In this document: positions 42,840 through 58,310 of the stretch, in pieces
How the letters are laid out: the number at the start of each line of letters is the position of its first letter
Position numbering within the stretch: the first letter of the stretch is position 1
Virus record (IMG/VR): IMGVR_UViG_3300024503_000485
Span: 155,445-219,444 of that record
DNA: 64,000 bases
Strand: one strand, 5' to 3'
Program-made: the position numbers and the translations under genes
The notes under the pieces: model-generated
Told to the model about the DNA's origin: nothing
Seen by the model: the letters and a program-made list of their open reading frames with translations, nothing else
The model's database searches: none

Positions 42840-45509
42840 TCATTCAAAATCAAACAATTTGTTAAATGTATTGTCACTTCTAGTTTGACTGATGTCCCAT
42901 TCTAGTACTCCAATTAAGTTTTCTAGTTTTTCATCAATCACGGTAGTTTCCATAGTTGCATCATCGAATGGTAAATCTTTAAACCATTGTGGCAAACGTA
43001 GTTCGTCTACTGGATAAGCTACTGAGGTATATGCCATCGGATTATCTTTGATTTTACAAACAATGACTTTTGCGCCATCAACGATGTTCATTGAGTATTT
43101 GTCGTCAAACATTCTCTTGAGAGTATTCCAATTAAGACTAGCACGAACGTGTCCGGGCATATTAGCCTTACCTTGTTTCTTTTCTTTGGCAGCATATTCT
43201 GTAATGTTGTTGGCTCGCTTAGGTGAACCCTTCTCCCAACCAGGTCGAGTCTTAAACTCTGTTCTAAAATCTGTGATGTATTCTAGAACTTCTTCTTTAC
43301 TATGACCAGTTAAGACCATTTCAAGAACTTTGCTTAGGAAGTCTTGGATAACAACCGGGGTATCTGACCGCTTGAGGTCAAGCCCCATAGCTTTAATCTT
43401 GCCTGGCTTTCCTTCGACATCTGTACGTTTTCCTTCTTTGTCGTAGTAGAGGACGGCATATCGTTTCTTTGTAATGAATAGTCCTTTGGAAGCAACAATC
43501 TCGCGACCTGCTTTGATGACCTCTCCTCGATTTTTTGGGCAGTGGAAGACATCGGACATAAATTTTGCAAAGGTTCCATTTACTTCTTCTCCTATGGTAT
43601 CATAAAGTTCAATTACATTTTCACGAGACCACGGTATGGTCCCTTTCTCAATGTCCTTCTTCAGCGTAGTGTATGCTGAGAAGTAACAAGAGTCTGTGTC
43701 ACCGTAGATAATAGCTTTACCTACATGGTTAAATTCGCCTGTGATAATTTCGTTTACTTTACTTGCCATATGTTTGGCAATTTGTCTACCAGTAAGAGTT
43801 GTGGATTGACCAATTCTGTTATCAAAGAATCTACATCCAGGATTAAGAATAGCACCGTATAATGAGTTTAAGTTAATCTTTTTAACTAATTGACGTTTGT
43901 CCCAGTATTCTTCTTCAATCTTATTACCTGCTTGAATACATTCTTTTAGTTTGGCCTGCATTTCTTTACGTTCTGAATACCATCTCTTAAGCAGTCCTGG
44001 AATAATACCTTCTTTTTCGTAGGTAAAGATAGTTCCATTTGCAGAGATCATCCACGGTTGATTACTTTCAAAAATTAAATCGTAAATTTGTGCTCCGCTA
44101 AGAGTATCACTACCGCCGCCTTCCCAGTCAATGGTAATTTCACGACCTACTTCTTTTTCCATTACAGAAGTATATTCTAAAGAACCAAAAATACCTTCCC
44201 ATGCTGCCGCAAATGATTTGCCTTTAGCCATCTCTGCTTCAATGTATGCTTTAGTTCCATCTGGACGTAGTTGACCAACAATGGTCTCTGGTCCCATGTT
44301 CAAAGCCCTAATAGCAGAAGGATAAAGACTATTAATATCAAGAGAACCAATCCACTCATGTATACCTTTCTTAGGATATGCAACATAAGCACCAGCGGCC
44401 TGTGTGTCTGCTCCAGCTTCTCGTTGTACACGGTTAGGAACAATCATGCCTCGTCTGTGTGCTTCATTAATAATTGCTTGTTCTGTAACAGCAACAGCAC
44501 CCATAGTTGTTTGAATAAGAACCGTATTTTCATGTGCAATGGTGTTAGCAAGATCGATAAATTTTAATTTTTTATCTAACTTATCTAACAATGCACAATC
44601 TTGTCGGTTATACTCAATAAACTTTCGAAAATCGTTATTGTAAAGTTGATCAAGTGTTCCTTCGTAAACGGTCTTAGACTCGCCTACTTCCATTTCCCCG
44701 ATCGCGTCCAGTCTGTATGTATGTCTTTCTTCGTATGTGTACTTTCTGTATAGTTCCAACGAGTCAACGTGAACACGCCCAACCAAGTCATAGGTAACAG
44801 CAGTTTTGCCAAACTTTTCATATTCTCTCTTTTTTGGATATTGATTCCATAAACAGAATCGACGAGTATCTTCTTTGCTTAGGACTTTGATTACACGATT
44901 AACGGTATATGGAATATCAAAACCTTCCGAGTTCCAACCACTTAATACATCTGCTTCTTCAATAAGGGTTAAAAATGTATCTAACATGTCTGCTTCATTT
45001 TCAAAGAGCATAGTGTTAGGAAATTCTGCAACAGCCTTCTCAGCTTCTTCCATATTCATAGTTTTTGGAGGAATAGCCAAACAGACCATAGTTTCCATCC
45101 ATTGTAGATGAACGGCAATGGCAGTAATTGGCATGAATGCATCGTCGGGTGATGCATAGCCACGCTCTGGGTCAAAGTCTACCTCAATATCAAAAAATGC
45201 TACATTTAATTTTGGAGCATCAATATTTAGATAATGATCTTCTAAACAGCGATAGATTGGGTTAATGTCAGATTCGTAAAGTTTTTTGTTTGAATGAATT
45301 GCAAGTTCTTTGCGAAGTTCTTTTACATTCTTGCAACTTACACGACTTAGGGGCTCGCCCTTGATTGATTGAAATTTACCTTTTGGATCAAGGTAATAAA
45401 AAAGGTGTTTGGCGGCATAATCTTTATAGTGCCTTTGACCTTTGTCATCACGTTCAACGACACGAATTGTGTCGTTTTCGCGATCATAGAATGCGTCAAC
45501 GTAGCTCAT
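42840..45509 (-). CDS. Family B DNA polymerase (gp43-like)
   Basis: FDIEVD, GWNSEGFD and YNRQD exonuclease motifs; SLDINSLYPS, KKINLNSLYG, YGDTDS, KKRY; start MSYVDA after AAGGAG. Confidence 0.97.
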   Translation of the reverse strand: MSYVDAFYDRENDTIRVVERDDKGQRHYKDYAAKHLFYYLDPKGKFQSIKGEPLSRVSCKNVKELRKELAIHSNKKLYESDINPIYRCLEDHYLNIDAPKLNVAFFDIEVDFDPERGYASPDDAFMPITAIAVHLQWMETMVCLAIPPKTMNMEEAEKAVAEFPNTMLFENEADMLDTFLTLIEEADVLSGWNSEGFDIPYTVNRVIKVLSKEDTRRFCLWNQYPKKREYEKFGKTAVTYDLVGRVHVDSLELYRKYTYEERHTYRLDAIGEMEVGESKTVYEGTLDQLYNNDFRKFIEYNRQDCALLDKLDKKLKFIDLANTIAHENTVLIQTTMGAVAVTEQAIINEAHRRGMIVPNRVQREAGADTQAAGAYVAYPKKGIHEWIGSLDINSLYPSAIRALNMGPETIVGQLRPDGTKAYIEAEMAKGKSFAAAWEGIFGSLEYTSVMEKEVGREITIDWEGGGSDTLSGAQIYDLIFESNQPWMISANGTIFTYEKEGIIPGLLKRWYSERKEMQAKLKECIQAGNKIEEEYWDKRQLVKKINLNSLYGAILNPGCRFFDNRIGQSTTLTGRQIAKHMASKVNEIITGEFNHVGKAIIYGDTDSCYFSAYTTLKKDIEKGTIPWSRENVIELYDTIGEEVNGTFAKFMSDVFHCPKNRGEVIKAGREIVASKGLFITKKRYAVLYYDKEGKRTDVEGKPGKIKAMGLDLKRSDTPVVIQDFLSKVLEMVLTGHSKEEVLEYITDFRTEFKTRPGWEKGSPKRANNITEYAAKEKKQGKANMPGHVRASLNWNTLKRMFDDKYSMNIVDGAKVIVCKIKDNPMAYTSVAYPVDELRLPQWFKDLPFDDATMETTVIDEKLENLIGVLEWDISQTRSDNTFNKLFDFE

Positions 45510-45518
45510 TTTTTCTCC

Positions 45519-45538
45519 TTGCAATTTTTGGCTTGCAA
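45519..45538 (-). promoter_or_regulatory. Hairpin abutting the polymerase Shine-Dalgarno (possible autogenous operator)
   Basis: TTGCAA-GCCAAAAA-TTGCAA immediately 5' of GGAG. Confidence 0.5.
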
Positions 45539-46158: not shown

Positions 46159-46187
46159 ATTATATAGCCAACAAAAAAGCCAGTCAA
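46159..46187 (-). promoter_or_regulatory. Sigma70 promoter TTGACT-N17-TATAAT (replication operon)
   Basis: -35 at 46182-46187 lies inside the terminator hairpin; -10 at 46159-46164. Confidence 0.75.
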
Positions 46188-46207
46188 CTCAGGACTGGCT
46201 TTTGTTT
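46173..46207 (-). terminator. Rho-independent terminator (potentially bidirectional)
   Basis: AAAAGCCAGTC/GACTGGCTTTT stem, 7-nt loop, T-runs on both strands. Confidence 0.8.
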
Positions 46208-46221: not shown

Positions 46222-47019
46222 TTACTTTTGTGCTTCGGATAACACATCATACATTTCAAATACACCGCCCATTCTTTCATATACTAGCCCGGCATATAGA
46301 TCTGCTTTCATTCCTTCACCTAGTTTAGATTTAGCAACACGCTCAGCCCAGGCAAATAATTCTTTGTCTTTTGGATCAATTTGTTGTTGACCGCCGCTTT
46401 CTTGTACTAGTTTTACCATGTCTTTGAAAGATAGTTTTGTTTCAACTGATTCTGCAACTACTTTCTTAGAAGTTTTTACAGATTCGTTTTTCTTACCAAA
46501 GTATTTTGCTTGTTTAGCACTCATACCTTTCTTGCCATCTTTCTTGTCGCCGCCTTTCTTTTTATCTTTAGCAGCTTTCTTCATTGGTTCTTTTTTGTCA
46601 CCGTCACCGTCGATGTCTGCAAAATCTGGCTTACCCTTTGCAGCTTCAACCATCTTACTAAATTTAGACTTGAACTCAGGATCAATAGACTCGTCTTTCT
46701 TTTTCTTATCTTCTTTTTCAGCTTGTTTTCCACTATAGCGATCACCCGCTGTATGTTTCAAACCAGTTTTAGTTTTTTCTGCTGTACCGCCACTAGCTGT
46801 TTTTTTCTTGTCGCCTACTTTAGCATCGGCATCAAAAACTTCATCCATCTTTTCATCAGCTTTTTTCTTAGCTTCTGCAATATATGATGAAGTACCTGCT
46901 AGCACACGTAATTGTGCATCTTCGTTAAGCTGAACAGCTTTTGGTAATTCTGGAGCTTTTGGTAGATCAACTTGATCGTTTAAGCTATGAATTTTAGTAA
47001 GTAATGATTTGAAGTCCAT
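46222..47019 (-). CDS. Lys/Glu-rich prohead core or internal head protein (putative)
   Basis: Many hydrophobic-x-E sites (LNE, IAE, VAE, VQE, LSE); KPDFADIDGDGDKKEPMKKA; GATAAATA at 47058-47065. Confidence 0.55.
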   Translation of the reverse strand: MDFKSLLTKIHSLNDQVDLPKAPELPKAVQLNEDAQLRVLAGTSSYIAEAKKKADEKMDEVFDADAKVGDKKKTASGGTAEKTKTGLKHTAGDRYSGKQAEKEDKKKKDESIDPEFKSKFSKMVEAAKGKPDFADIDGDGDKKEPMKKAAKDKKKGGDKKDGKKGMSAKQAKYFGKKNESVKTSKKVVAESVETKLSFKDMVKLVQESGGQQQIDPKDKELFAWAERVAKSKLGEGMKADLYAGLVYERMGGVFEMYDVLSEAQK

Positions 47020-47060
47020 GTTTGAGTCCTTGTATCCTGTATAAAGATCCTATAATATAT

Positions 47061-47318
47061 TTATCTTTTTATGGCAGAGCCGCCACCGAAGATATTAGTT
47101 TTCATATCTAGGGCATTTTTAGCTGTACCGTCCTTATTTTTTGCTTGTTTTACTTTAGGAACTGCTGGTGCTTTTGTACCAGATTTGCCTGGGCTACCTG
47201 TGTAGCTTTTATTTCCACGATCTTTTCCTATAGCAATATGAGGGCTAACAACCGTGCCGATATTAGCCGATGATGTTGCTCCTGCTGTAGCTGATTCTAA
47301 AATATCACGTATTTTCAT
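47061..47318 (-). CDS. Small basic internal-head protein candidate
   Basis: N-terminus MKIRDILE-S; AATAAATA at 47326-47333. Confidence 0.55.
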   Translation of the reverse strand: MKIRDILESATAGATSSANIGTVVSPHIAIGKDRGNKSYTGSPGKSGTKAPAVPKVKQAKNKDGTAKNALDMKTNIFGGGSAIKR

Positions 47319-47324
47319 AATATA

Positions 47325-47525
47325 TTATTTATTCTTTCCGCTTTTCATATTTGCACACCAGTGATACATTTTAGATTTCTCACCCGATGCATTTTTTGCA
47401 CGTTTGCGTAGATCAGTAACTGAACCAGAACAACTAGCCCCTGAACGTTTTACTCTTCCGGGGCGGCTTTTTCCTTTAACTTTTCCGTCAGCAAAGTTTT
47501 CTATAACAAACTCTTTAGCTCTCAT
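47325..47525 (-). CDS. Small basic internal-head protein candidate
   Basis: N-terminus MRAKEFVIE-N, resembling the T4 IPIII capsid-targeting leader. Confidence 0.6.
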   Translation of the reverse strand: MRAKEFVIENFADGKVKGKSRPGRVKRSGASCSGSVTDLRKRAKNASGEKSKMYHWCANMKSGKNK

Positions 47526-48691
47526 CTCATTGCTACCTGGAAAGCCTGATGCTTTTCTTTTCTAGAGTCTAAATGTTTAAGCCCGGGATTGATAGTTTTA
47601 GTAACCGCTTTAGTATCTTTAAAACTATCAATTTTTGGTGCTACTCTATTTTTCCAATACCAAACTGCTACTTTAGCAGCAATTTCTGGTTTTTCTACAA
47701 GTTCGGGTTTTTGCTCTAACGGCAATCCTAATGCTTGGCCTGCTTTCTTATAATTGTCTCGACCTGTCAGCTGTATGTATCCGCGACCTTTATATTTTGC
47801 TCCGTCTCCAACATTTTTATTACCCAATGCTTTTGCTTTTTTAGGAGCATATTTAGGATCATATTTTCGAAAGTCTAATGATCCGCCTATTTCTTTCATG
47901 TGTTTAAAATCTAAAGTTTCGTGAGCGCATTGTGCTAAAAACGCTGTAAGCTCGTGACCTACTATACCTGCTTTTTCAGCAGCCTTTTTTAAGTAGACTT
48001 CGTGGGGATTACCGGTTACGCTTTTTGCAATATCTTTTTTAGATACCTGTTGAATAACATCCGGTTTAGAATGTTTAGCATTAGCATCACTAGGAGCACC
48101 GAATGCCATTGCAGTTCCTAGTGCCCCGGCTGCTGCCCAGTCCTTCCATCCCTCGTCAACTTCTCCCTTAGCAGCAGTTTTTAATGCAGAAAAGACTTTA
48201 GATAAACTATCTTCGTCTGCTTGATACTTAATAGCAATACCGCCCGCTTGTTGCCAAGCACGAATGTTTACACCGTAATCGTCAATAAGAATATTAGGAG
48301 TACCGTCAGCATTTTTTGCATATTTGTATTTTTCGTGTTCGAATATAATTTTGTCAGCAGGAACATGAATATGTTTTTTCAGCCATTCACGTTTACCTCT
48401 AATGCTTCCTTCTTTATCAAAGTTTAATGGGCTGCTTAAAATATTATAACCACCTGCATAATCAACTACTATGCTTAAAAGTTTATTAGCAGTAGAAAAT
48501 GCCGGAAGGTCACGAAATAATTCATAGGCATTAGAGTCTTTAAAAAATGTTTCCCATTGATCTTTTGTCATTTTATTGTAGTGCTCTACATCATGTAAAC
48601 CTCCTACATGATTAAAAAGATCAGCAAGGACTCCGTCCATATCAACATAGACTTTCATTCCTTTGGGTAAACTAAACTCTTCTGCTCTCAT
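47522..48691 (-). CDS. Fusion: HAD 5'(3')-nucleotidase (NT5C-like) plus GH19 lysozyme/chitinase
   Basis: VYVDMDGVLAD, ILSSP, K, LIDD; then VDE-GWKDWAAAGALG linker; then FLAQCAHET, YKGRGYIQLTGRDNY, TINPG. Confidence 0.85.
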   Translation of the reverse strand: MRAEEFSLPKGMKVYVDMDGVLADLFNHVGGLHDVEHYNKMTKDQWETFFKDSNAYELFRDLPAFSTANKLLSIVVDYAGGYNILSSPLNFDKEGSIRGKREWLKKHIHVPADKIIFEHEKYKYAKNADGTPNILIDDYGVNIRAWQQAGGIAIKYQADEDSLSKVFSALKTAAKGEVDEGWKDWAAAGALGTAMAFGAPSDANAKHSKPDVIQQVSKKDIAKSVTGNPHEVYLKKAAEKAGIVGHELTAFLAQCAHETLDFKHMKEIGGSLDFRKYDPKYAPKKAKALGNKNVGDGAKYKGRGYIQLTGRDNYKKAGQALGLPLEQKPELVEKPEIAAKVAVWYWKNRVAPKIDSFKDTKAVTKTINPGLKHLDSRKEKHQAFQVAMR

Positions 48692-48762
48692 ACTGGACTA
48701 TATGGATTTAGAGGACGATCCCATTCGCCTTCTTGTGGTGGATAAACAGGATACTCGTTCAT
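48688..48762 (-). CDS. 24-aa Pro/Tyr-rich peptide, not in the ORF track
   Basis: [24 protein letters not shown]; exactly fills the gap with ATGA overlaps at both ends. Confidence 0.6.
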
Positions 48763-49082
48763 ACTGCAAAACTACTTCCACAACCGCAGGTTGTTACTGC
48801 ATTAGGATTTTTGATAGTAAAACTTGATCCCATTAATTCTTCTTTATAATCTATCTCTGCACCGTGTAGATATTGCATACTCATTGCGTCAACTAATACT
48901 TTCCATGCACCGCAATCAAATTCAAAGTCATCTTCGTTTTGTTCGTCGTCAAAGGTAAAGCCGTAACTAAATCCACTACATCCGCCACCTTGTACAAAGG
49001 TACGAAGTTTTAAATTAGGGTTTCCCTCTTCAGAAAGCAAATCTTGAATTTTTATTTTTGCTGATGGTGATATTGTAATCAT
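48759..49082 (-). CDS. erpA: A-type Fe-S cluster carrier (ErpA/IscA/HesB family)
   Basis: [43 protein letters not shown]. Confidence 0.9.
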
Positions 49083-49083
49083 T

Positions 49084-49287
49084 TTATTTTCCTACAGGTT
49101 TTTCTCCGGTTAGATAAGGAAGACTGAACCATAATTGAAACCATTCCGGAGTACCTGGTTTAATATTATGTTGTTTCATAAGTTCGCCTTTTTCGTTTCC
49201 AGTAATACTTATGTTGCTGCCGTCGTAAGGTTGATAACCTTTAAATTCGGTAATACCTGCAAGACGTTTTAGTTCAGATAAATCCAT
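49084..49287 (-). CDS. Small internal-head protein candidate
   Basis: Start [14 protein letters not shown] is coupled by TAATG; [13 protein letters not shown]. Confidence 0.6.
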
Positions 49288-49913
49288 TATGCTGTGGCTG
49301 GTTCGCCTGTACGAGAAACTTCCCATTTCTTGCCAGTCTGTTCAGTTTTCTTACGGCACATGTCTTGCAATCTACGAAGCTGAGCCATTTCTCTGTGATC
49401 GTCTGCGTATGTTCCTTGACCAGGAAACACTTTCCATTTTTTACCGTTGATATAGATAGCAAAGTTATTTGGTGGTTCGGTGTTGCCCTCGTCCCAATCA
49501 TCTTCTCTATTTCTACGTCCAAATCCGCTTACGCTACTATCGTAATCTCTTTGATAAGCATCACGTCCAAAACCTGATTCTTTCATAGGATCCTTTCCTG
49601 CCTGTACTTTTTTATACCATGAAATTAATTCAGCATCACTAGCAAGTTCAAGATAGTTTATTTCCCAGTCCATCTTTTTAGCTAAGAATTGAATAATTTG
49701 TTGTCTTTTAGATCTATCTAATAAACCTTCTGTTACTTCTGCTGGTTTTTTATGTTTTTCATATCCTTGTTTTTGTGCCTTCTTCATATCTTTATGAGCA
49801 CCGGCACCTGAGATAACACTTTGTGCAGCATGAGCTACAGGGTTTCTAGGTTTGACATTATACACTTTTGCTCTTCGGCTTTTCTTATGTTCTAATATAT
49901 CAGATATTTTCAT
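49287..49913 (-). CDS. Modular internal-head protein candidate
   Basis: MKISDILE leader; internal VTE-G and MKE-S junctions separate short modules. Confidence 0.6.
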   Translation of the reverse strand: MKISDILEHKKSRRAKVYNVKPRNPVAHAAQSVISGAGAHKDMKKAQKQGYEKHKKPAEVTEGLLDRSKRQQIIQFLAKKMDWEINYLELASDAELISWYKKVQAGKDPMKESGFGRDAYQRDYDSSVSGFGRRNREDDWDEGNTEPPNNFAIYINGKKWKVFPGQGTYADDHREMAQLRRLQDMCRKKTEQTGKKWEVSRTGEPATA

Positions 49914-52900
49914 GATGATCTCTTTTGTTTAGGACCCTTACGAGTTTTCCATTTTTTATCAGTGGAACACCAATAGCGTCCATATCCTTCTTTTACTTCT
50001 TTCTTTTTAGGATAACCGTGTTTTATTTCTAGTTGATAACCCTGTAATCCTTGTTTATCTAAAACCTTACTAATAAATTCTTCGGCTTCTTTCGCAGAAG
50101 AAAATTTATCACCTAAATTATATTTCCTCATTTCGCCATCGATCATTACATAGGCAATAGTAATAGGTTTGACTGGTTCTTCTGCCGCCTGTGCCGGACT
50201 TGCTAATAAATTAGCAGCAGCTAAAGCTGCGCCTGCCGTTTTACTTTTCCAACCTTCTTCAACGCTATCAATCATTGGATCAATACCGCGACTTCGGATT
50301 CCACCTTTTCTTCTTACTTTAGCAAGTTCTTCTAAGGCATGACGAATTTGTTCTACATTCATTTTAAGTTCGTCAAATTGTTTGGCCATGTTTTGCCATT
50401 CGTATGGACTAGCATTGTCTACTCTGCTAGCAAGATCTTTAATTTGTCCAGCTGCTCTCATCATTCTATATTTTAACTTCGCTGGGTTGGCTTTGTCATG
50501 GCTATGAATCATAGGATTCATTGGTTCGGAAGGATCCATTTCAATCGGTGCTTCAGATATGCTTTCTTGAATACCCATGCCCTTGCGTGTGAAATCCATT
50601 AATTTCATAATCCAATCTTTCCCTAATTTTTGAACATCAAAACCTTGAGACCATAATGCAAATTGCTGTTCTGGAGTAGCATTAGGATCTTTTAAAATGT
50701 TACGTAATTTAGTAAAACTCATTCCAGTTCCGCCAGTTTCGGCAGCTCTTGGTGTAACTTCTACATCAAATTTAACATGTTCAAATCCTGGATATTTAGG
50801 ATTCTTCATCCTTTTAGATAAATGCTCCATCCATTTTTTAAATCCTTCATATCGATCTTCGCCAACCATAACAATGATATGATCGTATGGAGGAGGATTA
50901 CTTGATGTTACTAATTCTTTTTCAATTTTTTTCATAACTAATCCACCTTCTTGGATCAGCTGGAACATGGCCTTCTTTTCTGGATATAATTTTTGCCATG
51001 TTTGTAATTTAACAGAAGCTGGAATAGGATCGTCTGGTCCCACGGCACTACTAATATAAACATAAGGATCAGCATTTAACTGAGACGCTTTGTTTAAAAC
51101 AAAATCTACAAGTTGTTGATGTCCAATGTGCCCAACAAAACTTCCTGCGGTAACGACAGCAGTTTTGCCCGATCTTCCATCGCCTGTTGCTCCAGGAGGT
51201 CTTGCAGATTTAATTGCTGCGTTTTTTGCAGAAATAATATCTTTTTGTTCTTGACTAGTAATTTTAACAGGACCATTCTTTGTGTTAAGAATAATGCCTT
51301 CATAATCTTTGCCTAACTTATCCTTTCCTATAATATCTGGATGTTGGATGATAAATTTTGCTAGATATTCTTTGACAGGCTGCAATGCTTCGGTAGCTTC
51401 TTTTTTAAGATCTCTTTTACCGCTATTAACTAACGATCGTAATGTTTCAAGATTTTCAATGGGAGGCAATGCCCCAGTTACATCTAAACTGCCGTTAGTA
51501 GTTAACGAGTTGTCAATGAACATTGTTGTTCCAATGCGACCAATTTTTCTCAATGCAGAGATGTATTTGTCGCTATTTGGATGTTGTTCGCCAGTTGAGC
51601 TTTTTTCAGCAAACAATGGCACAAGTGCTAGAGTAACACCTTCGGGCAACTTGTCATAATGTATGCCAACAAATTTTAATTTACCATCTTCTGTTTCAGT
51701 AGCAAATGGTAGATATAAAACTTCACAATGAATTTTTACATCATTGAGAGCGGTATTACCTAATTTTTGATCAACGTTAGCAATGACATGCATCATCTCG
51801 TCGTATAGATCATCAAATAACTTAGCCCTAGCTTTTACATCTGGAGCGGCTTGTCTTTCTTCAGCATGTTTGCTGAATGTACCAGGTTCAAACTTAGGAC
51901 CACTACGACTAGTTTCCATATATGGTTTGCCAGATTTATCTTTACCAAACCTAGCACCAAACCCGTCTACTTTAACGGTCATTGGAACATTGTGTAATTC
52001 AAATTTTCCTGTTGCTGAATTTTTTAATTCGTCTAATAAATTTAAAAAATCAGAATCCTTCATTTTTTCTAAATGAACAATTCCTTTTCTTTTACTTTGT
52101 ACTACTTCGGCTTCGTTAATACTTTCGGATACTTTGTAACTTGCTTTATAATCTTGACGCATTTGTTCAAGATTTTTATGAGGTGTAACGTTTAAAGTTT
52201 TTAATGCATAGTTAAGTGCTGTATTTTTTTCTAAGATATCTCTTTCAGGATCGCCTTTATATAATCCTTGTGCGCCAGGAGCATATAGCTTATCAATAAA
52301 TGCATCAATGACTTTTTCCTTTTCATCCTGAGGAACAACAAGATTCATAATTTCTAATAATCCTGTAAAACTCCATGTCTTAGGAAGAAGTTTTTGTATT
52401 TCTGTTTCTTTAACTCTTTTACCAAATATGTTTTGGAAAATTTTTCCAATATTCTTTTCGTAACCACTTGCTGGCAACGCCCTCATAACAGGAAGACCGT
52501 CAATTTCTAAAGGCTGTCCGGCATCGTCTAATACTGGTTCATATTTAGGACGAAGGCCTCCGCCTTCTTTGCTACTAACAGCAAAAGAAAACATATTGTC
52601 TGTTGTTGGAACATCTTGTTCAACTCTAGCTTTACCTCGGCCAACCATTTTTCTTAATAAAAAATCTTGGCTTGTTAATCGTGTAAATGATTGAATTAGA
52701 TACTTGTGAAATACACCTTTGATACCTTGGCTTAAATCTTCCCAGCTACTGCTATGACTAAATCCTGCCCAATCAGTGGGTTCGTCTTTTTCATAATCTA
52801 CAAATTCAAGATCAATCTGTACCTTAATAGGAGGATCAGTTAACTCCCACATTGTACTATATTGTTCGTTGCCTTTACTAAATCCAATTAATTTTCCATT

Positions 52901-53311
52901 GCCAACAACTTTACCTGTTGAGGATTGTAAAAATTGAACAAGTTCTCCTGCATATTCTTTATTAATTTGTGTATCTATATCGCCAACTTTAGGTTTAATA
53001 CGTTCAAACTCGTCGTCGGGTAAGTCAGTATTAAAAAAATGTAAACTAGATCCGCTTAAGAATTTTTTACTTGCTAAAACTTTTTTATTCCAAAGTTCGT
53101 GACCAACTGATGCAGTAAAACTAGAATTAATTCCGTTTAATAATTTGTCTAATATTGGAACAATATAAGAACGCTTGTGAACTTTAAGATCAATTTGCTG
53201 AGCTTGATGGTCACCGGTATCTCCTTGCCAGCCAGGGCTTTGAGTCGAAAGGTTTCCACCTTCTATAAGAGGTAAATTATTTCTCTTGTAGAATAATTCT
53301 AAAAGTTTCAT
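49910..53311 (-). CDS. 1133-aa multidomain protein: Pol-beta-type nucleotidyltransferase, ligase-like KxDG domain, HxGH cytidyltransferase-like domain and small C-terminal modules
   Basis: GSS..GDID..QID; TVKVDG..EGIIL..PVK; GSFVGHIGH; junctions at LIE-G, INE-A, ISE-A, VEE-G, VKE-G. Confidence 0.7.
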   Translation of the reverse strand: MKLLELFYKRNNLPLIEGGNLSTQSPGWQGDTGDHQAQQIDLKVHKRSYIVPILDKLLNGINSSFTASVGHELWNKKVLASKKFLSGSSLHFFNTDLPDDEFERIKPKVGDIDTQINKEYAGELVQFLQSSTGKVVGNGKLIGFSKGNEQYSTMWELTDPPIKVQIDLEFVDYEKDEPTDWAGFSHSSSWEDLSQGIKGVFHKYLIQSFTRLTSQDFLLRKMVGRGKARVEQDVPTTDNMFSFAVSSKEGGGLRPKYEPVLDDAGQPLEIDGLPVMRALPASGYEKNIGKIFQNIFGKRVKETEIQKLLPKTWSFTGLLEIMNLVVPQDEKEKVIDAFIDKLYAPGAQGLYKGDPERDILEKNTALNYALKTLNVTPHKNLEQMRQDYKASYKVSESINEAEVVQSKRKGIVHLEKMKDSDFLNLLDELKNSATGKFELHNVPMTVKVDGFGARFGKDKSGKPYMETSRSGPKFEPGTFSKHAEERQAAPDVKARAKLFDDLYDEMMHVIANVDQKLGNTALNDVKIHCEVLYLPFATETEDGKLKFVGIHYDKLPEGVTLALVPLFAEKSSTGEQHPNSDKYISALRKIGRIGTTMFIDNSLTTNGSLDVTGALPPIENLETLRSLVNSGKRDLKKEATEALQPVKEYLAKFIIQHPDIIGKDKLGKDYEGIILNTKNGPVKITSQEQKDIISAKNAAIKSARPPGATGDGRSGKTAVVTAGSFVGHIGHQQLVDFVLNKASQLNADPYVYISSAVGPDDPIPASVKLQTWQKLYPEKKAMFQLIQEGGLVMKKIEKELVTSSNPPPYDHIIVMVGEDRYEGFKKWMEHLSKRMKNPKYPGFEHVKFDVEVTPRAAETGGTGMSFTKLRNILKDPNATPEQQFALWSQGFDVQKLGKDWIMKLMDFTRKGMGIQESISEAPIEMDPSEPMNPMIHSHDKANPAKLKYRMMRAAGQIKDLASRVDNASPYEWQNMAKQFDELKMNVEQIRHALEELAKVRRKGGIRSRGIDPMIDSVEEGWKSKTAGAALAAANLLASPAQAAEEPVKPITIAYVMIDGEMRKYNLGDKFSSAKEAEEFISKVLDKQGLQGYQLEIKHGYPKKKEVKEGYGRYWCSTDKKWKTRKGPKQKRSS

Positions 53312-53658
53312 TAGTCTTCCTGTTTATAGTCGCCGTTCTCGATATGCTTTTCTTGTTCAGTAGCAATCATTTTTGCTAGTTCAACAATTTTGCTTTCAGG
53401 AAACTTTTCATTGGCATCTTCAATATCAAACATTTCACAATAATTTTCTAAACAACTTCTTAAAGGTTTAATGTAAATTGTGAAAGCCTTTGGATGTCCT
53501 GCATGTTTTTCGTGGCGCTTTACCGCAGGAAAGAAATATTTTGTTAATAATTCTGTATTATTATCAATATAAAATTTTAAATCGTCAATCCAATCAATGT
53601 CAGCTTGCTCGTCATCTTTTGGAGCTCCTATAGCCGACCACATTTCTTTTAATAACAT
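53311..53658 (-). CDS. Hypothetical protein (MLLKE leader)
   Basis: 115-aa ORF coupled by TAATG overlaps. Confidence 0.6.
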   Translation of the reverse strand: MLLKEMWSAIGAPKDDEQADIDWIDDLKFYIDNNTELLTKYFFPAVKRHEKHAGHPKAFTIYIKPLRSCLENYCEMFDIEDANEKFPESKIVELAKMIATEQEKHIENGDYKQED

Positions 53659-54059
53659 TATTTCTGCTCCGGTGGATTATATTCTACATGCTCTGCGGCA
53701 GAATTTAAATGATCATTGGCAAGGGTAATATAACTACTAACCCATCCTGGTAATTCATCACCTTCTCGGATACTATTAAAAAGAATCTTGGCGTTTTTTG
53801 CAATTTGAACTAATTCTGCTTTAGCCATGCTTGCTTCGTGATCTGTGGATTCTCTTATCCCTTTAGATCTAGCTTCTTTTTCTAAGTCTAATTTACGTTG
53901 CTGTACTGCTTTTGCAAGATCAGGCTCTTTCATAACAACAGGATCAGTTTCAAGATCGTGTAGGGCCTTCTTTTTAGCTTCGTAATCACCCTTAGGGTCT
54001 GCTGAATTTAATTCTGTTTCAAATAAAGAAACTTCAAGTTTAGTGATAATATCTTTCAT
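53658..54059 (-). CDS. Internal-head protein candidate
   Basis: Likely start MKDIITKLEVSLFE; IRE-S junction before DHEASMAKAEL..LPGWVSSYITLA; GATAAATA at 54085-54092. Confidence 0.55.
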   Translation of the reverse strand: MKDIITKLEVSLFETELNSADPKGDYEAKKKALHDLETDPVVMKEPDLAKAVQQRKLDLEKEARSKGIRESTDHEASMAKAELVQIAKNAKILFNSIREGDELPGWVSSYITLANDHLNSAAEHVEYNPPEQK

Positions 54060-54084
54060 AGTATGGTTCCGTAAGGACATACTA

Positions 54085-54092
54085 TATTTATC
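54085..54092 (-). promoter_or_regulatory. Late promoter candidate (GATAAATA) heading the 54059-46222 cluster
   Basis: Intergenic TAAATA core. Confidence 0.6.
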
Positions 54093-54104: not shown

Positions 54105-54473
54105 TTAGAAGTTATAGTGAATTGACTGGATAGTACCGTCTTCTAATACGTGACCGGCACGAATCCAGACGAAATTACCAGTAAAATTAACGCTTTGAGA
54201 CACTACAGGGTTATCTGGATTTGTAATTAGCGTACTATCGTCGCCTAATGTAGTTCCATCAATGTCAAACCAATCTGATTCGCTAGGATCTAATGCTAAA
54301 GACCCTTGCAATTTAATAGTTCCAACAAACGAATCAACTCTATAAACTGCTGTATGCAGCGAATTATTTAGGCTATGATACCCAGCACCGATACCCTTTT
54401 CAGTATATGTAAAATCTGGAGTTGCCGATTCAGTTGAATAATTTTCTAGTAAAACAATGATTTCAGTGGACAT
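54105..54473 (-). CDS. Hypothetical beta-rich (probably virion) protein
   Basis: FVGTIKLQGSL..WFDI..NFTGNFVWIRA; GCTAAATA just upstream. Confidence 0.55.
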   Translation of the reverse strand: MSTEIIVLLENYSTESATPDFTYTEKGIGAGYHSLNNSLHTAVYRVDSFVGTIKLQGSLALDPSESDWFDIDGTTLGDDSTLITNPDNPVVSQSVNFTGNFVWIRAGHVLEDGTIQSIHYNF

Positions 54474-54476
54474 CTC

Positions 54477-55163
54477 TTATTTAGCTAAAATTTGATAGTC
54501 GTAAACCCTACCCACAACTTCACCATTTCGCAATTGCATCATGAATAGAGTTTTTTCGTCCTCTACAAGTACGTATCGACGGTCCCAATTATAATCGGTC
54601 TTTATAAACCAACTTTTAACTGCGGTTGACATTCGTATCTTTTCCCCTTGAGTTTCAATCCAAGAAACAAAACTTTCTTTTGCTTCTTTATTTCCTTTTA
54701 ACTTATGGGGAAGAAGATATACTTTGTAGTTATATCTATTATGAGGTAATTTTTTAGCAAAAATCGAATTTGAATTTGTTTGTTCTTGTTCTTGCCCAGG
54801 AAATGGTTCAAATACATGTCTTACATAATCTTTAAATTCTAAAGCAAGATTTTTACAAAATGTAGCATCGTTAGTGTATATGTCGATATATCTACTTTCA
54901 ATTCTTTTAGTAAATTCAACATTTTTATTTTTTTCTAAAAATGTAACTAGTTCTAAGATTTGATCTTTGTTACTAAATGCTTGTTTTCTGCTGTCAAAAT
55001 AATAATGTCGATCTTGTTCTTCTGGGTTTAAACAGAATTCTCTAATCTCATCATATGTTTTTGTGCGTAACAAAGATACCCCCTTGATCAAGACGGTAAC
55101 TTTGTATAACCACTTATTGTAAAACTTTTGACCTGTATACTTTACATCATACGGTTTCTTCAT
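54477..55163 (-). CDS. Hypothetical protein
   Basis: 228-aa ORF, GGAGG RBS. Confidence 0.65.
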   Translation of the reverse strand: MKKPYDVKYTGQKFYNKWLYKVTVLIKGVSLLRTKTYDEIREFCLNPEEQDRHYYFDSRKQAFSNKDQILELVTFLEKNKNVEFTKRIESRYIDIYTNDATFCKNLALEFKDYVRHVFEPFPGQEQEQTNSNSIFAKKLPHNRYNYKVYLLPHKLKGNKEAKESFVSWIETQGEKIRMSTAVKSWFIKTDYNWDRRYVLVEDEKTLFMMQLRNGEVVGRVYDYQILAK

Positions 55164-57459
55164 TGGATTCCTCCAAGTTTAACCCTCGCTTCAATGCCTT
55201 TTTCTGTTCTTTGGTTAAAATAGGACTAATTTCAAATTTTAGATCGTCATTCTCAATGCTAACATCAACTCGTCCGCCGTTTTGTAATTCTCCAAATAGG
55301 ACTTTACGGCTCAAAGGAGATTTGAGTTTATTATCAATTAAACGAGCCAACGGTCTTGCGCCCATCTTTTTATCGTAACCTCTTTCAGCTAACCATTTAA
55401 CTGATTCGGAATCAACAACAATCTCAATGCCTTTATCTTTAAGTTGATCGTTAAGTTCTTTAACAAACTTTTTAACAATTTGACCAACGGTAACCATTGA
55501 AAGATTTGAAAACTTAATAATAGCATCTAAACGATTACGGAACTCCGGAGCAAAGAATTTCTTAACTGCCTTGTCGTCCTCGTCGTCCTTGCTTAAGTCA
55601 CCAAAACCTATGGTATTTTTTTCGTTGTCTGCTGCCCCTAAATTACTGGTCATAATTAAAATAGTGTTGCGACCGTCTGCTTGTTTTCCATTACTTCCAG
55701 TTACAAATCCGTTATCCATAAATTGTAACAAGATGTTTGACACATCGGGATGTGCTTTTTCAATTTCATCTAAAAGCAATACAGCATTTGGGTGTTCTTG
55801 TAGTTTGGTAATCAACTGACCTGCGTTATCTTCGTATCCAACATAACCAGGAGGTGCACCAATTAATCGAGCAACGCTATGTTTTTCTTGATATTCACTC
55901 ATATCAAAACGAATTAATTGCATACCCATTTTATCTGCTAACGCTCTTGCAGTTTCTGTTTTACCTGTACCAGTTGGACCTAAAAATAGAAAACTGCCAA
56001 TGGGTTTATTAGGATTTTTCATACCTGCTTGAGAAACAAAAATCTTATCAAGAAGATTATCAACTGCTGTATCTTGTCCATAAACAGATGCCTTCATGGA
56101 ACCTTCTAGGTCAGATAAGTTCTTACTTTCTTTTTGTGCTACCATTTCTAGCGGCATATTAACCATTTTACTAAGTTCGTATGTAACCTGTTCAATATCT
56201 ACCAGTTGTTCAATGCCTTCCATGCCGTCTTCGTCTTTTACTTTATAACGAGCACAAGCACAATCGATAATGTCAATTGCTTTGTCTGGTAATTTTTTAT
56301 CAGACATATACTTCATAGAAAGTTTAACTGATTGCTCAATTGCACCGTCAGTAATTTTAACGTTGTGATGTTTTTCGTAGTATTTCTTAATACCTTTAAT
56401 AATTTTAACTGCAAGTTCTGGCGTTGGCTCGTCAACCGTAACACGTTGGAATCGACGCATTAGAGCACGATCTTTTTCAAAATGTTTACGATAATCTTCC
56501 CACGTAGTTGATGCTACAAGTTTAATAACACCTTTAGTAAGGATTGGCTTCAACATATTGGCCATATCATTTGAACTTTGATTAGCAGCACCGGCACCTT
56601 GCATCATGTGTGCTTCGTCAATGAATAAAATAATCTTGCCTTTCTTTTCTAAAGCACCTAACACAGCTTTTACACGTTCTTCAAAATCTCCACGATACTT
56701 ACTACCAGCTAGCAATGCTGAAATATCTAAACTATAGACCTGATGGTCTTGAATAAACTTAGGTACTTTCTTTTCAAAGATCTTGCGAGCAAGACCTTCT
56801 ACAATAGCAGTCTTACCGACTCCGGGTTCACCTACCAGTAAAACATTACATTTGTTTCTGCGAGCAAGAACAAGTTGTACCTTTTCAAGCTCGTCGTCTC
56901 TACCAATAACAGGATCAATTTTACGTTGTTTTGCTTGTAGGCTTAGGTTAGTACAAAAAGTATTAATAATTCGTTCCATCTGACTAGGGTTTGTAACTGC
57001 GGTTTCTTGGCTTGATTCTTCTTCATTATTAACCATTTCTTGGAAATAATTAATAAATTTTTCTTTTGTTAAGCCGCCTTTGTTTAAAAAATAAAATGCA
57101 AAACTATTTTTTTCATTTAAGATGCTAACAATAACATCTGCAACTTCAATACGTTGACGCCCACTAAACAAAACTTGAGTAAAACATCTATTGAGCACAC
57201 GTTCTACAGCATGAGTTTTTCTTGGTTTTTCGCATTCTGGATTTTTAATATCGCTAAGATTATTTTTAATATAATGATCTAGATTTGTTTTAATAAAATT
57301 AGCATCAGCACCGAAGTCGGTGATCATCTTAAATGAATCAGCATCATCCATTATACCAAGAAGCAAATGTTCAATGGTAATATATTCGTGATCAAGGCTT
57401 TTTGCCATATTCATCGAATTTTCAAAAATTTGTTGTAGACTTTGACTTGGTTCAATCAT
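55147..57459 (-). CDS. clpA: ClpA-like AAA+ unfoldase
   Basis: Clp N-domain (HEYITIEHLL), DPVIGRDDE, GEPGVGKT, FIDEAH, GPTGTGKT, LLDEIEKAH, IGF loop, GARPL; no ClpB middle domain. Confidence 0.92.
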   Translation of the reverse strand: MIEPSQSLQQIFENSMNMAKSLDHEYITIEHLLLGIMDDADSFKMITDFGADANFIKTNLDHYIKNNLSDIKNPECEKPRKTHAVERVLNRCFTQVLFSGRQRIEVADVIVSILNEKNSFAFYFLNKGGLTKEKFINYFQEMVNNEEESSQETAVTNPSQMERIINTFCTNLSLQAKQRKIDPVIGRDDELEKVQLVLARRNKCNVLLVGEPGVGKTAIVEGLARKIFEKKVPKFIQDHQVYSLDISALLAGSKYRGDFEERVKAVLGALEKKGKIILFIDEAHMMQGAGAANQSSNDMANMLKPILTKGVIKLVASTTWEDYRKHFEKDRALMRRFQRVTVDEPTPELAVKIIKGIKKYYEKHHNVKITDGAIEQSVKLSMKYMSDKKLPDKAIDIIDCACARYKVKDEDGMEGIEQLVDIEQVTYELSKMVNMPLEMVAQKESKNLSDLEGSMKASVYGQDTAVDNLLDKIFVSQAGMKNPNKPIGSFLFLGPTGTGKTETARALADKMGMQLIRFDMSEYQEKHSVARLIGAPPGYVGYEDNAGQLITKLQEHPNAVLLLDEIEKAHPDVSNILLQFMDNGFVTGSNGKQADGRNTILIMTSNLGAADNEKNTIGFGDLSKDDEDDKAVKKFFAPEFRNRLDAIIKFSNLSMVTVGQIVKKFVKELNDQLKDKGIEIVVDSESVKWLAERGYDKKMGARPLARLIDNKLKSPLSRKVLFGELQNGGRVDVSIENDDLKFEISPILTKEQKKALKRGLNLEESNEETV

Positions 57460-58304: not shown

Positions 58305-58310
58305 AATACT

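What the first reader, a model, noticed from the sequence alone, without database searches (positions are those of the whole stretch)
46222..54092. Late cluster of probable capsid-internal (ejected) proteins with shared targeting leaders and Glu cleavage junctions
Seen: consecutive ORFs behind TAAATA motifs begin [66 protein letters not shown] and MKIRDILE. Their internal modules are joined at hydrophobic-x-E followed by G/A/S (INE-A, ISE-A, VEE-G, VKE-G, VTE-G, VDE-G, IRE-S). Established: T4 internal proteins carry an N-terminal capsid-targeting leader (IPIII MKTYQEFIAE), which the gp21 prohead protease removes after (I/L)xE. Inference: this is an expandable cargo system in which unrelated domains are strung into polyproteins, packaged, cut apart during head maturation and injected as ready-made effectors.
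Basis: partly seen in the sequence, partly recalled or inferred. Interest (0 to 1): 0.82.

Follow-up and report, generated by a model that had tools for sequence, protein, structure and literature searches.

The report
Phage cargo proteins with cleavable leaders
A late operon of an uncultivated T4-related giant phage encodes proteins built from interchangeable modules, each preceded by a short leader or a Leu/Ile-x-Glu junction of the kind phage T4 uses to load proteins into its head and trim them. This points to an expandable set of pre-packaged proteins, though no experiment has yet shown packaging or cutting.

Summary
The ten minus-strand ORFs from 54080 to 46222 form one translationally coupled unit. 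It has a T4-late-type ATAAATA motif at three entry points and a strong terminator at its end.

Nine of the ten begin with an amphipathic leader (MRAxEF[IV]xE, MK[IL]x[DE][IL]LE or MxLxELFE). In about 90 related metagenomic loci, 77-80 distinct proteins carry this leader. In control T4-like head loci only 3 of 1683 do.

Seven internally placed module families were followed through different fusion partners. They are preceded by Glu in 85 of 86 distinct internal contexts, against a 6.8% background.

The first module of the 1133-aa protein starts either M-GGN, with no leader, or with a 5-20 residue leader ending (L/I/V)-x-E directly before GGN (65 of 68). That is the T4 gp21 cleavage consensus, and both routes give the same mature N-terminus.

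AlphaFold models place the leader and the junctions outside the folded domains.

Cargo includes a Pol-beta-like nucleotidyltransferase, a ligase-like module, an HxGH nucleotidyltransferase, a 5'-nucleotidase, a second GH19 muramidase and several small basic proteins.

Packaging, cleavage and injection remain inferred, and the protease gene was not found in the sequence I could reach. I rate it a new variant of the T4 capsid-targeting system.

The parts
54085..54091 (-). ATAAATA, T4-late-promoter-like motif at the head of the operon
   Evidence: The window holds 10 copies against 36.8 expected. All lie between or at the ends of genes and just upstream of a start, including tail-fibre genes. It is conserved upstream of 19 of 21 homologous first genes.
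53658..54059 (-). First gene (133 aa from Met8). It has a 14-residue leader MKDIITKLEVSLFE and two modules joined at IRE|S (residue 77 of the 140-aa ORF).
   Evidence: Homologues start MRDLLSKLDxxxSE, and modules 8-78 and 80-134 occur separately elsewhere. Gene callers give 133 aa.
53311..53658 (-). Conserved acidic 115-aa protein with a leader-like N-terminus MLLKEMW
   Evidence: It is present in 32 distinct relatives, always second in the operon. It has no Glu at the position where MxLxELFE leaders end, so cleavage is doubtful.
53261..53311 (-). 17-residue leader of the 1133-aa polyprotein, MKLLELFYKRNNLPLIE
   Evidence: pLDDT is below 60 and the leader lies outside the fold. 65 of 68 extended homologues end (L/I/V)xE directly before GGN, and 21 others start M-GGN.
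52112..53260 (-). Module A (aa 18-400), a Pol-beta-superfamily nucleotidyltransferase of a new family. It ends at SE|SINE|A.
   Evidence: AlphaFold pLDDT 93.8, pTM 0.90. Foldseek gives weak but consistent hits to Pol beta, Pol mu, TUTase and PAP. G87-S88, D111, D113, D167 and E169 are invariant. 36 shorter homologues end at 389-403.
51176..52111 (-). Module B (aa 401-712), ligase/capping-enzyme-like covalent nucleotidyltransferase
   Evidence: K47-x-D49-G50, E130, E271-G272 and K283 of the module are invariant. This is a motif-based inference: there was no PDB or Pfam hit.
50552..51175 (-). Module C (aa 713-920), HxGH cytidylyl/adenylyl-transferase-like. It ends at QE|SISE|A.
   Evidence: phrog_3041 at 3e-15. 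In relatives it is a stand-alone gene with its own MxLxELFE leader.
50255..50551 (-). Module D (aa 921-1019), starting APIEMDP and ending VEE|G
   Evidence: It is preceded by Glu in 23 of 24 unrelated contexts. Shorter homologues end at 1012.
49988..50254 (-). Module E (aa 1020-1108): GWKSK, an Ala/Gly-rich hydrophobic stretch, AQA, then an 80-aa domain. It ends VKE|G.
   Evidence: The same module is found at 90% identity inside an unrelated 215-aa leader-bearing protein.
49913..49987 (-). Module F (aa 1109-1133), a basic tail starting GYGRYWCS
   Evidence: It is preceded by [ILV]xE in all 10 contexts and is attached to many different proteins.
49287..49913 (-). Basic 208-aa protein. Leader MKISDILE, then a DUF7230-like basic module, VTE|G, and two further modules.
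   Evidence: Pfam DUF7230 at 2e-5, below the curated cut-off. Homology breaks at residues 60-64 and 107-138.
49084..49287 (-). Small protein starting at Met14 of the 80-aa ORF, leader [14 protein letters not shown]
   Evidence: Homologues start ME[IL][11 protein letters not shown]|F.
48759..49082 (-). IscA/HesB Fe-S carrier without a leader. It sits inside the operon but is probably not cargo.
   Evidence: Pfam Fe-S_biosyn at 1e-19. It is present in every relative examined.
48152..48691 (-). N-terminal half of the 389-aa protein: leader-like MRAEEF plus a 5'-deoxynucleotidase (NT5C/HAD) domain, ending VDE|G at residue 180
   Evidence: Pfam NT5C at 2e-9. The model is confident for residues 10-175. 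A leaderless homologue of 70% identity exists in an ordinary T4-like phage.
47525..48151 (-). C-terminal half of the 389-aa protein: GWKDW, an Ala/Gly-rich hydrophobic stretch, an AxA motif, then a GH19 muramidase
   Evidence: Pfam Glyco_hydro_19 at 9e-13. Residues 179-213 have pLDDT below 50. In about 40 relatives this unit follows N-terminal parts of 10 to 400 aa and is always preceded by Glu.
47325..47525 (-). Basic 66-aa protein (pI 10.5): leader MRAKEFVIE plus the NFADGK module
   Evidence: The NFADGK module is preceded by Glu in 31 of 31 contexts, 15 directly after a leader and 16 internal. pI.
47061..47318 (-). Basic 85-aa protein (pI 10.3), leader MKIRDILE, with its own ATAAATA at 47326-47332
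   Evidence: The motif is conserved upstream in 18 of 23 relatives.
46222..47019 (-). Conserved, highly charged 265-aa protein (MDFKSLL...) with ten hxE sites, its own ATAAATA at 47058-47064, last in the operon
   Evidence: The motif is upstream in 25 of 33 relatives.
46175..46203 (.). Hairpin with an 11-pair stem and T-runs on both sides, the terminator that closes the unit. A sigma-70-like promoter for the next gene overlaps it (46159-46187).

Best explanation
The region is a late operon of a T4-related jumbo phage. It encodes proteins destined for the inside of the prohead.

Proposed steps (none shown experimentally):
1. Each protein starts with an 8-17 residue amphipathic propeptide (M-[KR]-[AIL]-x-[ED]-[FIL]-[IVLF]-x-E and variants). 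I infer that it works like the T4 capsid-targeting sequence and binds the scaffolding core during head assembly.
2. The head-maturation protease, a T4 gp21 orthologue expected elsewhere in the genome, cuts after Glu in (L/I/V)-x-E.
3. That removes the leader. It also separates modules that are encoded in tandem in one polypeptide.
4. The products stay in the head with the DNA and are most likely expelled into the next host.

Shown by sequence comparison: the junction is a short universal motif, and modules have been shuffled, fused and split freely among related phages.

Products in this phage:
- a Pol-beta-like nucleotidyltransferase;
- a ligase-like plus HxGH-transferase unit, with no cut site between the two parts;
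- a 5'-nucleotidase;
- a GH19 wall hydrolase whose new N-terminus would resemble a signal peptide;
- several small lysine-rich peptides, which could neutralise DNA charge.
For: Lineage and timing:
- The DNA polymerase is 47-51% identical to those of the jumbo phages Phosso and Atu_ph07. These belong to group 2.2, which uniformly carries a gp21-type prohead peptidase (PMC7824862).
- ATAAATA is depleted in the window (10 against 36.8 expected). It is found only in front of genes, including tail-fibre genes and three genes of this unit. A terminator closes the unit.

Leader:
- It starts 77-80 distinct proteins in cluster loci against 3 of 1683 in controls.
- Synonymous codon variation shows selection on the peptide.
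- The core EF[IV]xE matches T4's EFIAE. In T4, residues 4 and 7 of the leader target the protein and residues 8 and 10 direct processing (PMC9026906).

Junctions:
- 85 of 86 internal and 80 of 82 leader contexts have Glu at P1. [ILVMF]xE occurs in 66 and 78 of them, against backgrounds of 6.8% and 2.0%.
- The same module occurs directly behind a leader in one phage and behind another module in the next.

Module A:
- 21 representatives start M-GGN. 65 of 68 extended ones have L (39), I (25) or V (1) at P3 and Glu at P1 before an invariant GGN.
- Leaderless versions in Vibrio pv27, Xanthomonas X1 and Stenotrophomonas YB07 lack a late motif upstream. The leader-bearing Campylobacter CP220 version has one.

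Structure:
- Leader residues 1-17 and residues 397-400 of module A fall outside the fold.
- So do residues 179-213 of the 389-aa protein.

Context:
- The window has a separate canonical lysis cassette with its own GH19 endolysin. The GH19 here is therefore an extra copy.
- Several products are strongly basic, as T4 internal proteins are.
Against: - No proteomic, structural or genetic data exist for this phage or any close relative. tblastn of three cluster proteins (the 1133-, 208- and 66-aa proteins) found no close cultured relative.
- The protease gene was not located.
- In the only cultured phage with a leader-bearing homologue (CP220), an 11-band virion gel did not list that protein. That survey was too shallow to count as absence.
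- P3 is not hydrophobic in about a quarter of internal junctions, for example EQE|G, TDE|G and DNE|G, where the hydrophobic residue sits at P4.
- Some leaders lack the terminal Glu (MKAKEFIPAS..., MRAEEFSLP).
- Four of five leaderless fused homologues keep the A/B junction site.
- The Glu could formally be the first residue of each module for another reason.
Confidence: 0.68

Rival explanations
1. The proteins are ordinary cytoplasmic, multi-domain late enzymes that are never packaged or cut. On this reading the shared N-terminus serves expression, folding or another localisation. The Glu before each module is a linker convention inherited with the modules.
For: - Packaging has not been shown.
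- Leaderless homologues function as normal genes in other phages.
- Leaderless fused forms keep the junction Glu.
- The B/C boundary has no site.
Against: - It does not explain why unrelated modules all require (L/I/V)-x-E in front of them.
- It does not explain why the leader always ends exactly where leaderless homologues begin.
- It does not explain why the leader resembles the T4 targeting sequence, or why the unit is late. Codon data exclude a nucleotide-level signal.
Confidence: 0.14
2. The cluster is a lysis or envelope module. The GH19 proteins would be signal-anchored or SAR-type endolysins, whose internal hydrophobic stretch inserts in the membrane and is released at the AxA site. 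The small basic proteins would act on the envelope.
For: - The conserved GWKDW, Ala/Gly-rich stretch and AxA in front of the GH19 domain look like a weak signal or SAR segment.
- Some relatives add a LysM domain.
- The unit is expressed late.
Against: - The window already has a complete lysis cassette with a GH19 endolysin, spanin-like genes and a holin-like gene at 58594-61089.
- The hydrophobic stretch lies 10 to 400 residues from the N-terminus, behind acidic leaders and cytoplasmic enzymes.
- Most proteins of the cluster are nucleotide-handling enzymes with no link to lysis.
Confidence: 0.08
3. The polyproteins are cut at Glu by a protease other than the prohead protease, either host or phage encoded, and the pieces act in the producing cell. 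This would resemble viral polyprotein processing without encapsidation.
For: - The junction rule demands a Glu-directed cut but does not name the enzyme.
- A ClpA-like ATPase and a DnaJ gene are always immediately upstream.
Against: - The only Glu-directed processing known in this phage lineage is by gp21-type proteases inside the prohead.
- The (L/I)-x-E preference is that of gp21.
- The N-terminal leader would then have no role.
Confidence: 0.06

Closest known systems
T4 internal proteins IPI, IPII, IPIII (and Alt) with the capsid-targeting sequence, processed by gp21
   Same: - A short N-terminal propeptide shared by otherwise unrelated proteins. T4 has MKTYQEFIAE; here the type is MRAKEFVIE.
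- The propeptide ends in (I/L/V)-x-E.
- T4-late-type promoter motifs upstream (timing inferred here, not measured).
- Basic products.
- A variable locus between conserved flanks.
- Cargo includes enzymes that may act on the host, as Alt does.
   Different: - Here many cargo proteins are multi-module polypeptides with internal junction sites, up to 1133 aa in this phage and over 2000 aa in relatives.
- The leader has at least three sequence flavours and lengths of 5-20 residues.
- The cargo repertoire differs: nucleotidyltransferase, ligase-like, nucleotidase, GH19, GNAT, amidoligase.
- There is no sequence homology to T4 IPs.
- Nothing here has been shown experimentally.
Inner-body and ejection proteins of phiKZ, 201phi2-1 and SPN3US, cut by gp175/gp245
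   Same: Giant phages with a gp21-related protease that cuts after Glu at several sites per protein. Large amounts of internal protein are ejected with the DNA (PMC9026906, PMC10052503).
   Different: - Their motif is (S/A/G)-x-E or A-x-E, not (L/I)-x-E.
- Their propeptides are mostly long (111-254 aa) and are degraded.
- No shared short leader and no shuffling of modules has been described for them.
- They are a different phage lineage (group 1, with a phage nucleus and a virion RNA polymerase).
Polyvalent proteins of phages and conjugative elements (Iyer et al. 2017, PMC5512222)
   Same: Several unrelated conflict-type domains in one polypeptide (lysozyme, GNAT, nucleotidyltransferase, amidoligase), predicted to be packaged and injected, and sometimes processed.
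   Different: - Polyvalent proteins are thought to be released by built-in metallopeptidase domains, or to stay intact.
- They have no common N-terminal leader and no universal junction motif.
- Here no protease domain is part of the polypeptides.
T7 gp16 and P22 ejection proteins (internal proteins with wall-degrading or membrane-spanning parts)
   Same: A muralytic domain and a hydrophobic segment carried inside the capsid and expelled at infection.
   Different: Those are podovirus core proteins without leaders or proteolytic maturation, and they are unrelated in sequence.

Membership tests
T4-type capsid-targeted internal proteins | N-terminal propeptide of about 10-19 residues shared by unrelated proteins of one phage | tested here: met
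   Nine of ten ORFs here carry one, as do 77-80 distinct proteins in relatives, against 3 of 1683 in controls.
T4-type capsid-targeted internal proteins | Propeptide ends in the gp21 site (L/I)-x-E | tested here: met
   65 of 68 module-A leaders have L, I or V at P3 and Glu at P1. 78 of 82 leader contexts overall have [ILVMF]xE. Exceptions exist ([19 protein letters not shown]).
T4-type capsid-targeted internal proteins | Genome encodes a gp21-family prohead protease | tested here: inconclusive
   It is not in the window or in roughly 10-20 kb beyond either end. A local tblastn with T4 gp21 found it only in an unrelated T4-like contig. It is expected from the lineage (PMC7824862).
T4-type capsid-targeted internal proteins | Late transcription together with head genes | tested here: met
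   The ATAAATA motif is shared with tail-fibre genes, is conserved in relatives, and the unit has its own terminator. The promoter assignment is by analogy with T4.
T4-type capsid-targeted internal proteins | Physical presence in the head, removal of the leader, ejection with the DNA | not testable with these tools
   It needs virion proteomics. The phage is uncultivated.
T4-type capsid-targeted internal proteins | Sequence homology to IPI, IPII, IPIII or Alt | not tested
   IP and Alt sequences were not compared. PHROGs and Pfam returned no family annotated as an internal head protein. There was no similarity to T4 gp20-gp24, gp67 or gp68. The resemblance is therefore functional, not by descent of the cargo.
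Polyvalent proteins | Two to fifteen unrelated effector domains in one phage polypeptide, in a late or structural context | tested here: met
   The 1133-aa protein has at least five modules. Relatives reach 2135 aa and include Amidoligase_2, NTP_transf_2 and DUF6934.
Polyvalent proteins | Built-in peptidase domain (MPTase or similar) for self-release | tested here: not met
   No peptidase domain was found in any cluster protein or relative scanned.
phiKZ-type processed inner-body proteins | Cleavage motif (S/A/G)-x-E and long degraded propeptides | tested here: not met
   P3 is L or I, not S, A or G. The leaders are short.
SAR or signal-anchored endolysin (for the GH19 half) | Weakly hydrophobic Gly/Ala-rich segment at the extreme N-terminus of the muralytic domain | tested here: inconclusive
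   The segment and an AxA motif are conserved. The segment becomes N-terminal only if the protein is cut at E|GWKDW. In the primary product it is 10-400 residues from the start. No signal-peptide predictor was available.

The most novel reading that the evidence does not exclude
T4-related jumbo phages may use the prohead-protease site as a universal joint. Any domain placed behind (L/I)-x-E in a leader-bearing polypeptide would be packaged, released and delivered, which makes the head a freely reprogrammable injection device. In this phage the load would include a ready-made Pol-X-like, ligase-like and nucleotidyltransferase repair set. It would also include a muramidase whose signal-peptide-like N-terminus is unmasked only by the maturation cut, so that it could be re-exported to the periplasm of the newly infected cell.
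Probability: 0.25. Interest if true: 0.85.

Novelty: new variant of a known kind. Interest (0 to 1): 0.66.

Why it matters
If true, the T4 capsid-targeting principle is not a peculiarity of three small T-even proteins. It would be a widespread, combinatorial delivery system in environmental giant phages.

- The nucleotidyltransferase family alone has about 1190 representative clusters at 50% identity (E up to 0.001). Of the 89 among the best 150 that carry GGN near the N-terminus, 68 have a leader.
- The comparison gives a sequence rule, leader plus (L/I/V)-x-E, for predicting packaged proteins in uncultivated phages.
- It gives a list of candidate first-minute effectors and anti-defence enzymes.
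- It offers natural leaders and junctions that could be tried in the T4 protein-packaging vectors already used in the laboratory.

Tried and rejected
- Nucleotide search of the region, and tblastn of the 208-aa and 66-aa proteins, against cultured phages found nothing. No proteome of a close relative is therefore available.
- Looking for the protease:
  - no head genes in the window;
  - stepping out of the window with exact-protein look-ups met a gene of more than 4500 aa on the left, and replication, fibre and baseplate genes on the right, so I stopped;
  - a scan of viral contigs with a gp21 alignment returned only ordinary T4-like phages;
  - the one fetched locus with gp21, gp22 and gp23 (L082) is a different, smaller phage carrying a leaderless nucleotidase.
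- PDB sequence searches for modules A, B and C, and a profile search for module B, found nothing significant.
- There was no similarity of any cluster protein to T4 gp20-24, gp67 or gp68. I therefore dropped the idea that the 265-aa protein is a gp22 homologue.
- I predicted that leaderless fused homologues would have lost the A/B junction site. Four of five keep it.
- RiPP precursors, suggested by the radical-SAM genes in the window, were rejected because the leader-bearing proteins are large enzymes.

Full report
**What the window is.** The DNA polymerase at 42840-45524 is 47-51% identical to those of the jumbo phages Sinorhizobium Phosso and Agrobacterium Atu_ph07, and about 44% identical to those of a group of ~350-380-kb E. 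coli jumbo phages (e.g. TH47, Turkey3). The same sequence occurs in a 219-kb IMG/VR contig and in many freshwater metagenome contigs. The plus strand carries tail-fibre genes (213-12145) and four radical-SAM genes. The minus strand carries replication genes, the cluster in question, a ClpA-like ATPase, a DnaJ gene and a lysis cassette. No cultured phage matches the region at nucleotide level.

**Checking the observation.** Ten minus-strand ORFs run from 54080 to 46222.
- They are joined by ATGA or TAATG overlaps or by gaps of a few bases.
- Two ORFs start further in than the longest reading frame: the first gene at Met8 (133 aa, as gene callers have it) and the 80-aa ORF at Met14.
The window has 10 copies where 36.8 are expected from shuffles.
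- Nine of the ten lie directly upstream of a gene start. Three precede tail-fibre or neighbouring late genes (3518, 10289, 14016) and three lie in this cluster (54091, 47332, 47064).
- In related contigs the motif is conserved in front of the homologues of the first gene (19 of 21), the 85-aa gene (18 of 23) and the last gene (25 of 33). It almost never precedes the internal genes (1 of 43).
- An 11-pair hairpin with T-runs at 46175-46203 closes the unit. A near-consensus sigma-70 promoter then starts the next gene.

So this is a separate late-type operon with three entry points. Not every ORF sits behind its own motif.

**The leader.** Scans of IMG/VR with the 1133-aa and 389-aa proteins returned 88 loci.
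- Among their 2776 distinct ORFs, 80 begin with M[RK]xx[DE][FILVM]xxE. The commonest forms are MRAHEFVTE, MRAHEFITE, MRASEFITE and MRANEFIVE.
- In 80 control loci centred on the head genes of ordinary T4-like phages, 3 of 1683 ORFs match. All three are UvsY.
- Codons vary synonymously. Ala3 uses GCA 24, GCT 14, GCC 8 and GCG 6 times; Glu uses GAA and GAG; Ile uses three codons. Substitutions are conservative (R/K, I/V/L, F/I). Selection therefore acts on the peptide.
- A second flavour, MxLxELFE, heads the cytidylyltransferase-like genes. Longer forms head the first gene (MRDLLSKLDxxxSE) and the 80-aa gene ([14 protein letters not shown]).
In T4, residues 4 and 7 direct packaging and residues 8 and 10 direct cutting (PMC9026906).
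- My own translation of T4 shows the same style at the N-termini of gp24 (MAKINELLRE), gp22 (MLKEQLIAE) and gp21 (MNEPQLLIE).

**The junctions.** The GH19 half of the 389-aa protein shows the pattern most clearly.
- In about 40 distinct relatives it begins GWKDW, then an Ala/Gly-rich stretch and an AxA motif. It follows N-terminal parts of 10 to about 400 residues: a bare leader, a Lys/Arg- and Gly/Tyr-rich module, the NFADGK module, a nucleotidase, a HAD phosphatase or LysM. It is always preceded by Glu.
- The NFADGK module, which is the 66-aa protein here, follows a leader in 15 contexts and another module in 16. Glu precedes it in all 31.
- The same holds for GYGRYWCS (10 of 10), GVAGPK (6 of 6), APIEMDP (23 of 24), ASYPGN (3 of 3) and DWQKTNK (2 of 2).
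- Over all families, 85 of 86 internal contexts have Glu at P1. [ILVMF]-x-E occurs in 66, and a hydrophobic residue one position further out occurs in 15 more. Background is 6.8% for Glu and 2.0% for the motif.

**Module A, the decisive family.** A search of 1.84 billion representatives with the 1133-aa protein found 1190 relatives.
- Of 89 with GGN near the start, 21 begin M-GGN.
- The other 68 have an extension of 2-20 residues. In 65 of these the residue before GGN is Glu, and P3 is Leu (39), Ile (25) or Val (1). The three exceptions have a Met directly before GGN or are misregistered.
- GGN itself is invariant in a 65-sequence alignment.

Both gene forms would therefore give the same mature N-terminus, one through Met removal and the other through a cut after (L/I)-x-E. 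That motif is the reported gp21 preference, the "LIE" type logo in PMC9026906.

In cultured phages, the leaderless genes of Vibrio pv27, Xanthomonas X1 and Stenotrophomonas YB07 have no late motif upstream. The leader-bearing gene of Campylobacter CP220 (MKLSELMFILE|GGN) has AATAAATA upstream, and CP220 encodes a gp21 homologue.

**Structure.**
- AlphaFold2 with 65 homologues gives module A a pLDDT of 93.8 and pTM of 0.90. Residues 1-11 are below 50, residues 12-20 are near 58 and residues 397-400 are below 50.
- The 389-aa protein folds into two confident domains (10-175 and 215-389). They are separated by residues 179-213 at pLDDT below 50, which begin at the VDE|G site.
- Natural ends of shorter homologues project onto the 1133-aa protein at 389-403 (36 cases), 693-711 (7), 916-929 (4) and 1012 (8). 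hxE sites lie at 396/400, 916/920 and 1019, but none lies near 700. Modules B and C probably stay joined.
- The A/B linker varies greatly in length and sequence among 33 leader-bearing fused forms. It still contains [ILVM]-x-E just before module B in all but one or two.

**What the cargo is.**
- Module A has the G-S...D-x-D...D/E signature. Its weak but consistent Foldseek hits are to Pol beta, Pol mu, terminal uridylyltransferases and poly(A) polymerase (best E 4e-3, TM 0.26-0.39). It is a new family of Pol-beta-superfamily nucleotidyltransferase.
- Module B keeps K-x-D-G, a later Glu, E-G and a Lys, in the order of ligase/capping-enzyme motifs I, III, IV and V. This is inference from motifs only.
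- Module C is an HxGH nucleotidyltransferase.
- In X1 and YB07 these are three or four adjacent separate genes. The cassette is therefore a functional unit, not a chance string.
- The 389-aa protein joins a 5'-deoxynucleotidase to a GH19 muramidase.
- The window has a separate lysis cassette with its own GH19 endolysin at 60454-61089 and spanin- and holin-like genes next to it. The GH19 here is therefore surplus to lysis.
- The 66-, 85- and 208-aa proteins have pI 9.6-10.5.
- Relatives add GNAT, Amidoligase_2, NTP_transf_2, DUF6267, DUF6934 and DUF6321.

**Mechanism, and what is inferred.**
- Shown by sequence: the late-type unit, the shared leader, the Glu junction rule, module shuffling, and sites lying outside folded domains.
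- Inferred from T4 and giant-phage precedent: leaders bind the prohead core, a gp21 orthologue cuts after Glu, and the pieces stay with the DNA and enter the next cell.
- More speculative: the cut at E|GWKDW exposes a signal-peptide-like N-terminus on the muramidase and on module E.

**Weak points.**
- The protease gene was not reached. [quoted passage not shown]
- About a quarter of internal junctions have a polar P3.
- Some leaders lack the Glu.
- Leaderless fused forms keep the A/B site.
- The only relevant virion gel (CP220, 11 bands) does not list the homologue.

**Comparison and novelty.** The system works like the T4 IP and capsid-targeting system and shares the features that could be tested. 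It is not homologous in cargo. It differs in its polyprotein architecture and in the scale of shuffling.
- phiKZ-type phages also cut head proteins after Glu at several sites, but at (S/A/G)-x-E and without a common short leader.
- Polyvalent proteins share the multi-effector idea but rely on built-in peptidases. None is present here.
- I found no paper describing this leader or junction system, within the limits of four full-text searches.

I class it as a new variant of a known kind.

Noticed in passing
window 48759-49082 (-): An IscA/HesB-type Fe-S carrier gene without a leader sits in the middle of the cargo operon, and does so in every relative examined. Its role there is unexplained. The window also has four radical-SAM genes that would need Fe-S clusters.
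   Followed up: partly
window 54105-58334 (-): A DnaJ gene, a ClpA-like double-AAA ATPase (770 aa, with no ClpP seen) and two small genes always lie immediately upstream of the cargo operon in relatives. They could be a dedicated unfoldase or chaperone for loading the cargo.
   Followed up: no
window 58594-61089 (-): A canonical lysis cassette: a GH19 endolysin (60454-61089), a membrane protein and a lipoprotein that resemble i- and o-spanins (59723-60450), a DUF4337 gene and a holin-like 3-TM protein.
   Followed up: partly
window 19835-25092 (+): Four consecutive radical-SAM genes follow the tail-fibre genes and several unannotated ORFs. CP220 also has a radical-SAM gene directly upstream of its module-A homologue.
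   Followed up: no
window 1-3518 (+), and L091-L093: The ORF entering the window at its left end is the C-terminus of a 4100-4560 aa structural protein.
   Followed up: no
window, whole: ATAAATA is about 3.7-fold depleted (10 copies against 36.8 expected) and, with one exception (62548, inside or just after the start of a plus-strand ORF), is confined to positions directly upstream of gene starts. This fits avoidance of a late-promoter sequence inside genes.
   Followed up: yes
P0005, P0007, P0010, P0023: Fused A-B-C homologues that start M-GGN or ME-GGN, with no leader, still carry [ILVM]-x-E at the A/B junction. The simple cargo model does not predict this. Another targeting element, or recent loss of the leader, could explain it.
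   Followed up: partly
L082 1950-5401 and 9917-10486: An ordinary T4-like phage contig has gp21, gp22 and gp23 homologues. 4.5 kb downstream it has a leaderless nucleotidase 70% identical to the N-terminal half of the 389-aa protein. This is evidence that the domain moved between phage lineages and gained or lost the leader.
   Followed up: partly
window 47525-48151 and 49988-50254 (-): Two modules begin GWK(D/S), then 14-16 Ala/Gly-rich residues and an AxA motif (ANA|K, AQA|A). In relatives the motif is usually DAEA|AKK. It resembles a signal-peptidase site that would be usable only after an upstream cut.
   Followed up: partly
L013 and L014 9995-16402: More distant relatives encode 2073-2135 aa versions of the polyprotein. 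After the A-B-C cassette these add NTP_transf_2, Amidoligase_2 and DUF6934 domains.
   Followed up: partly
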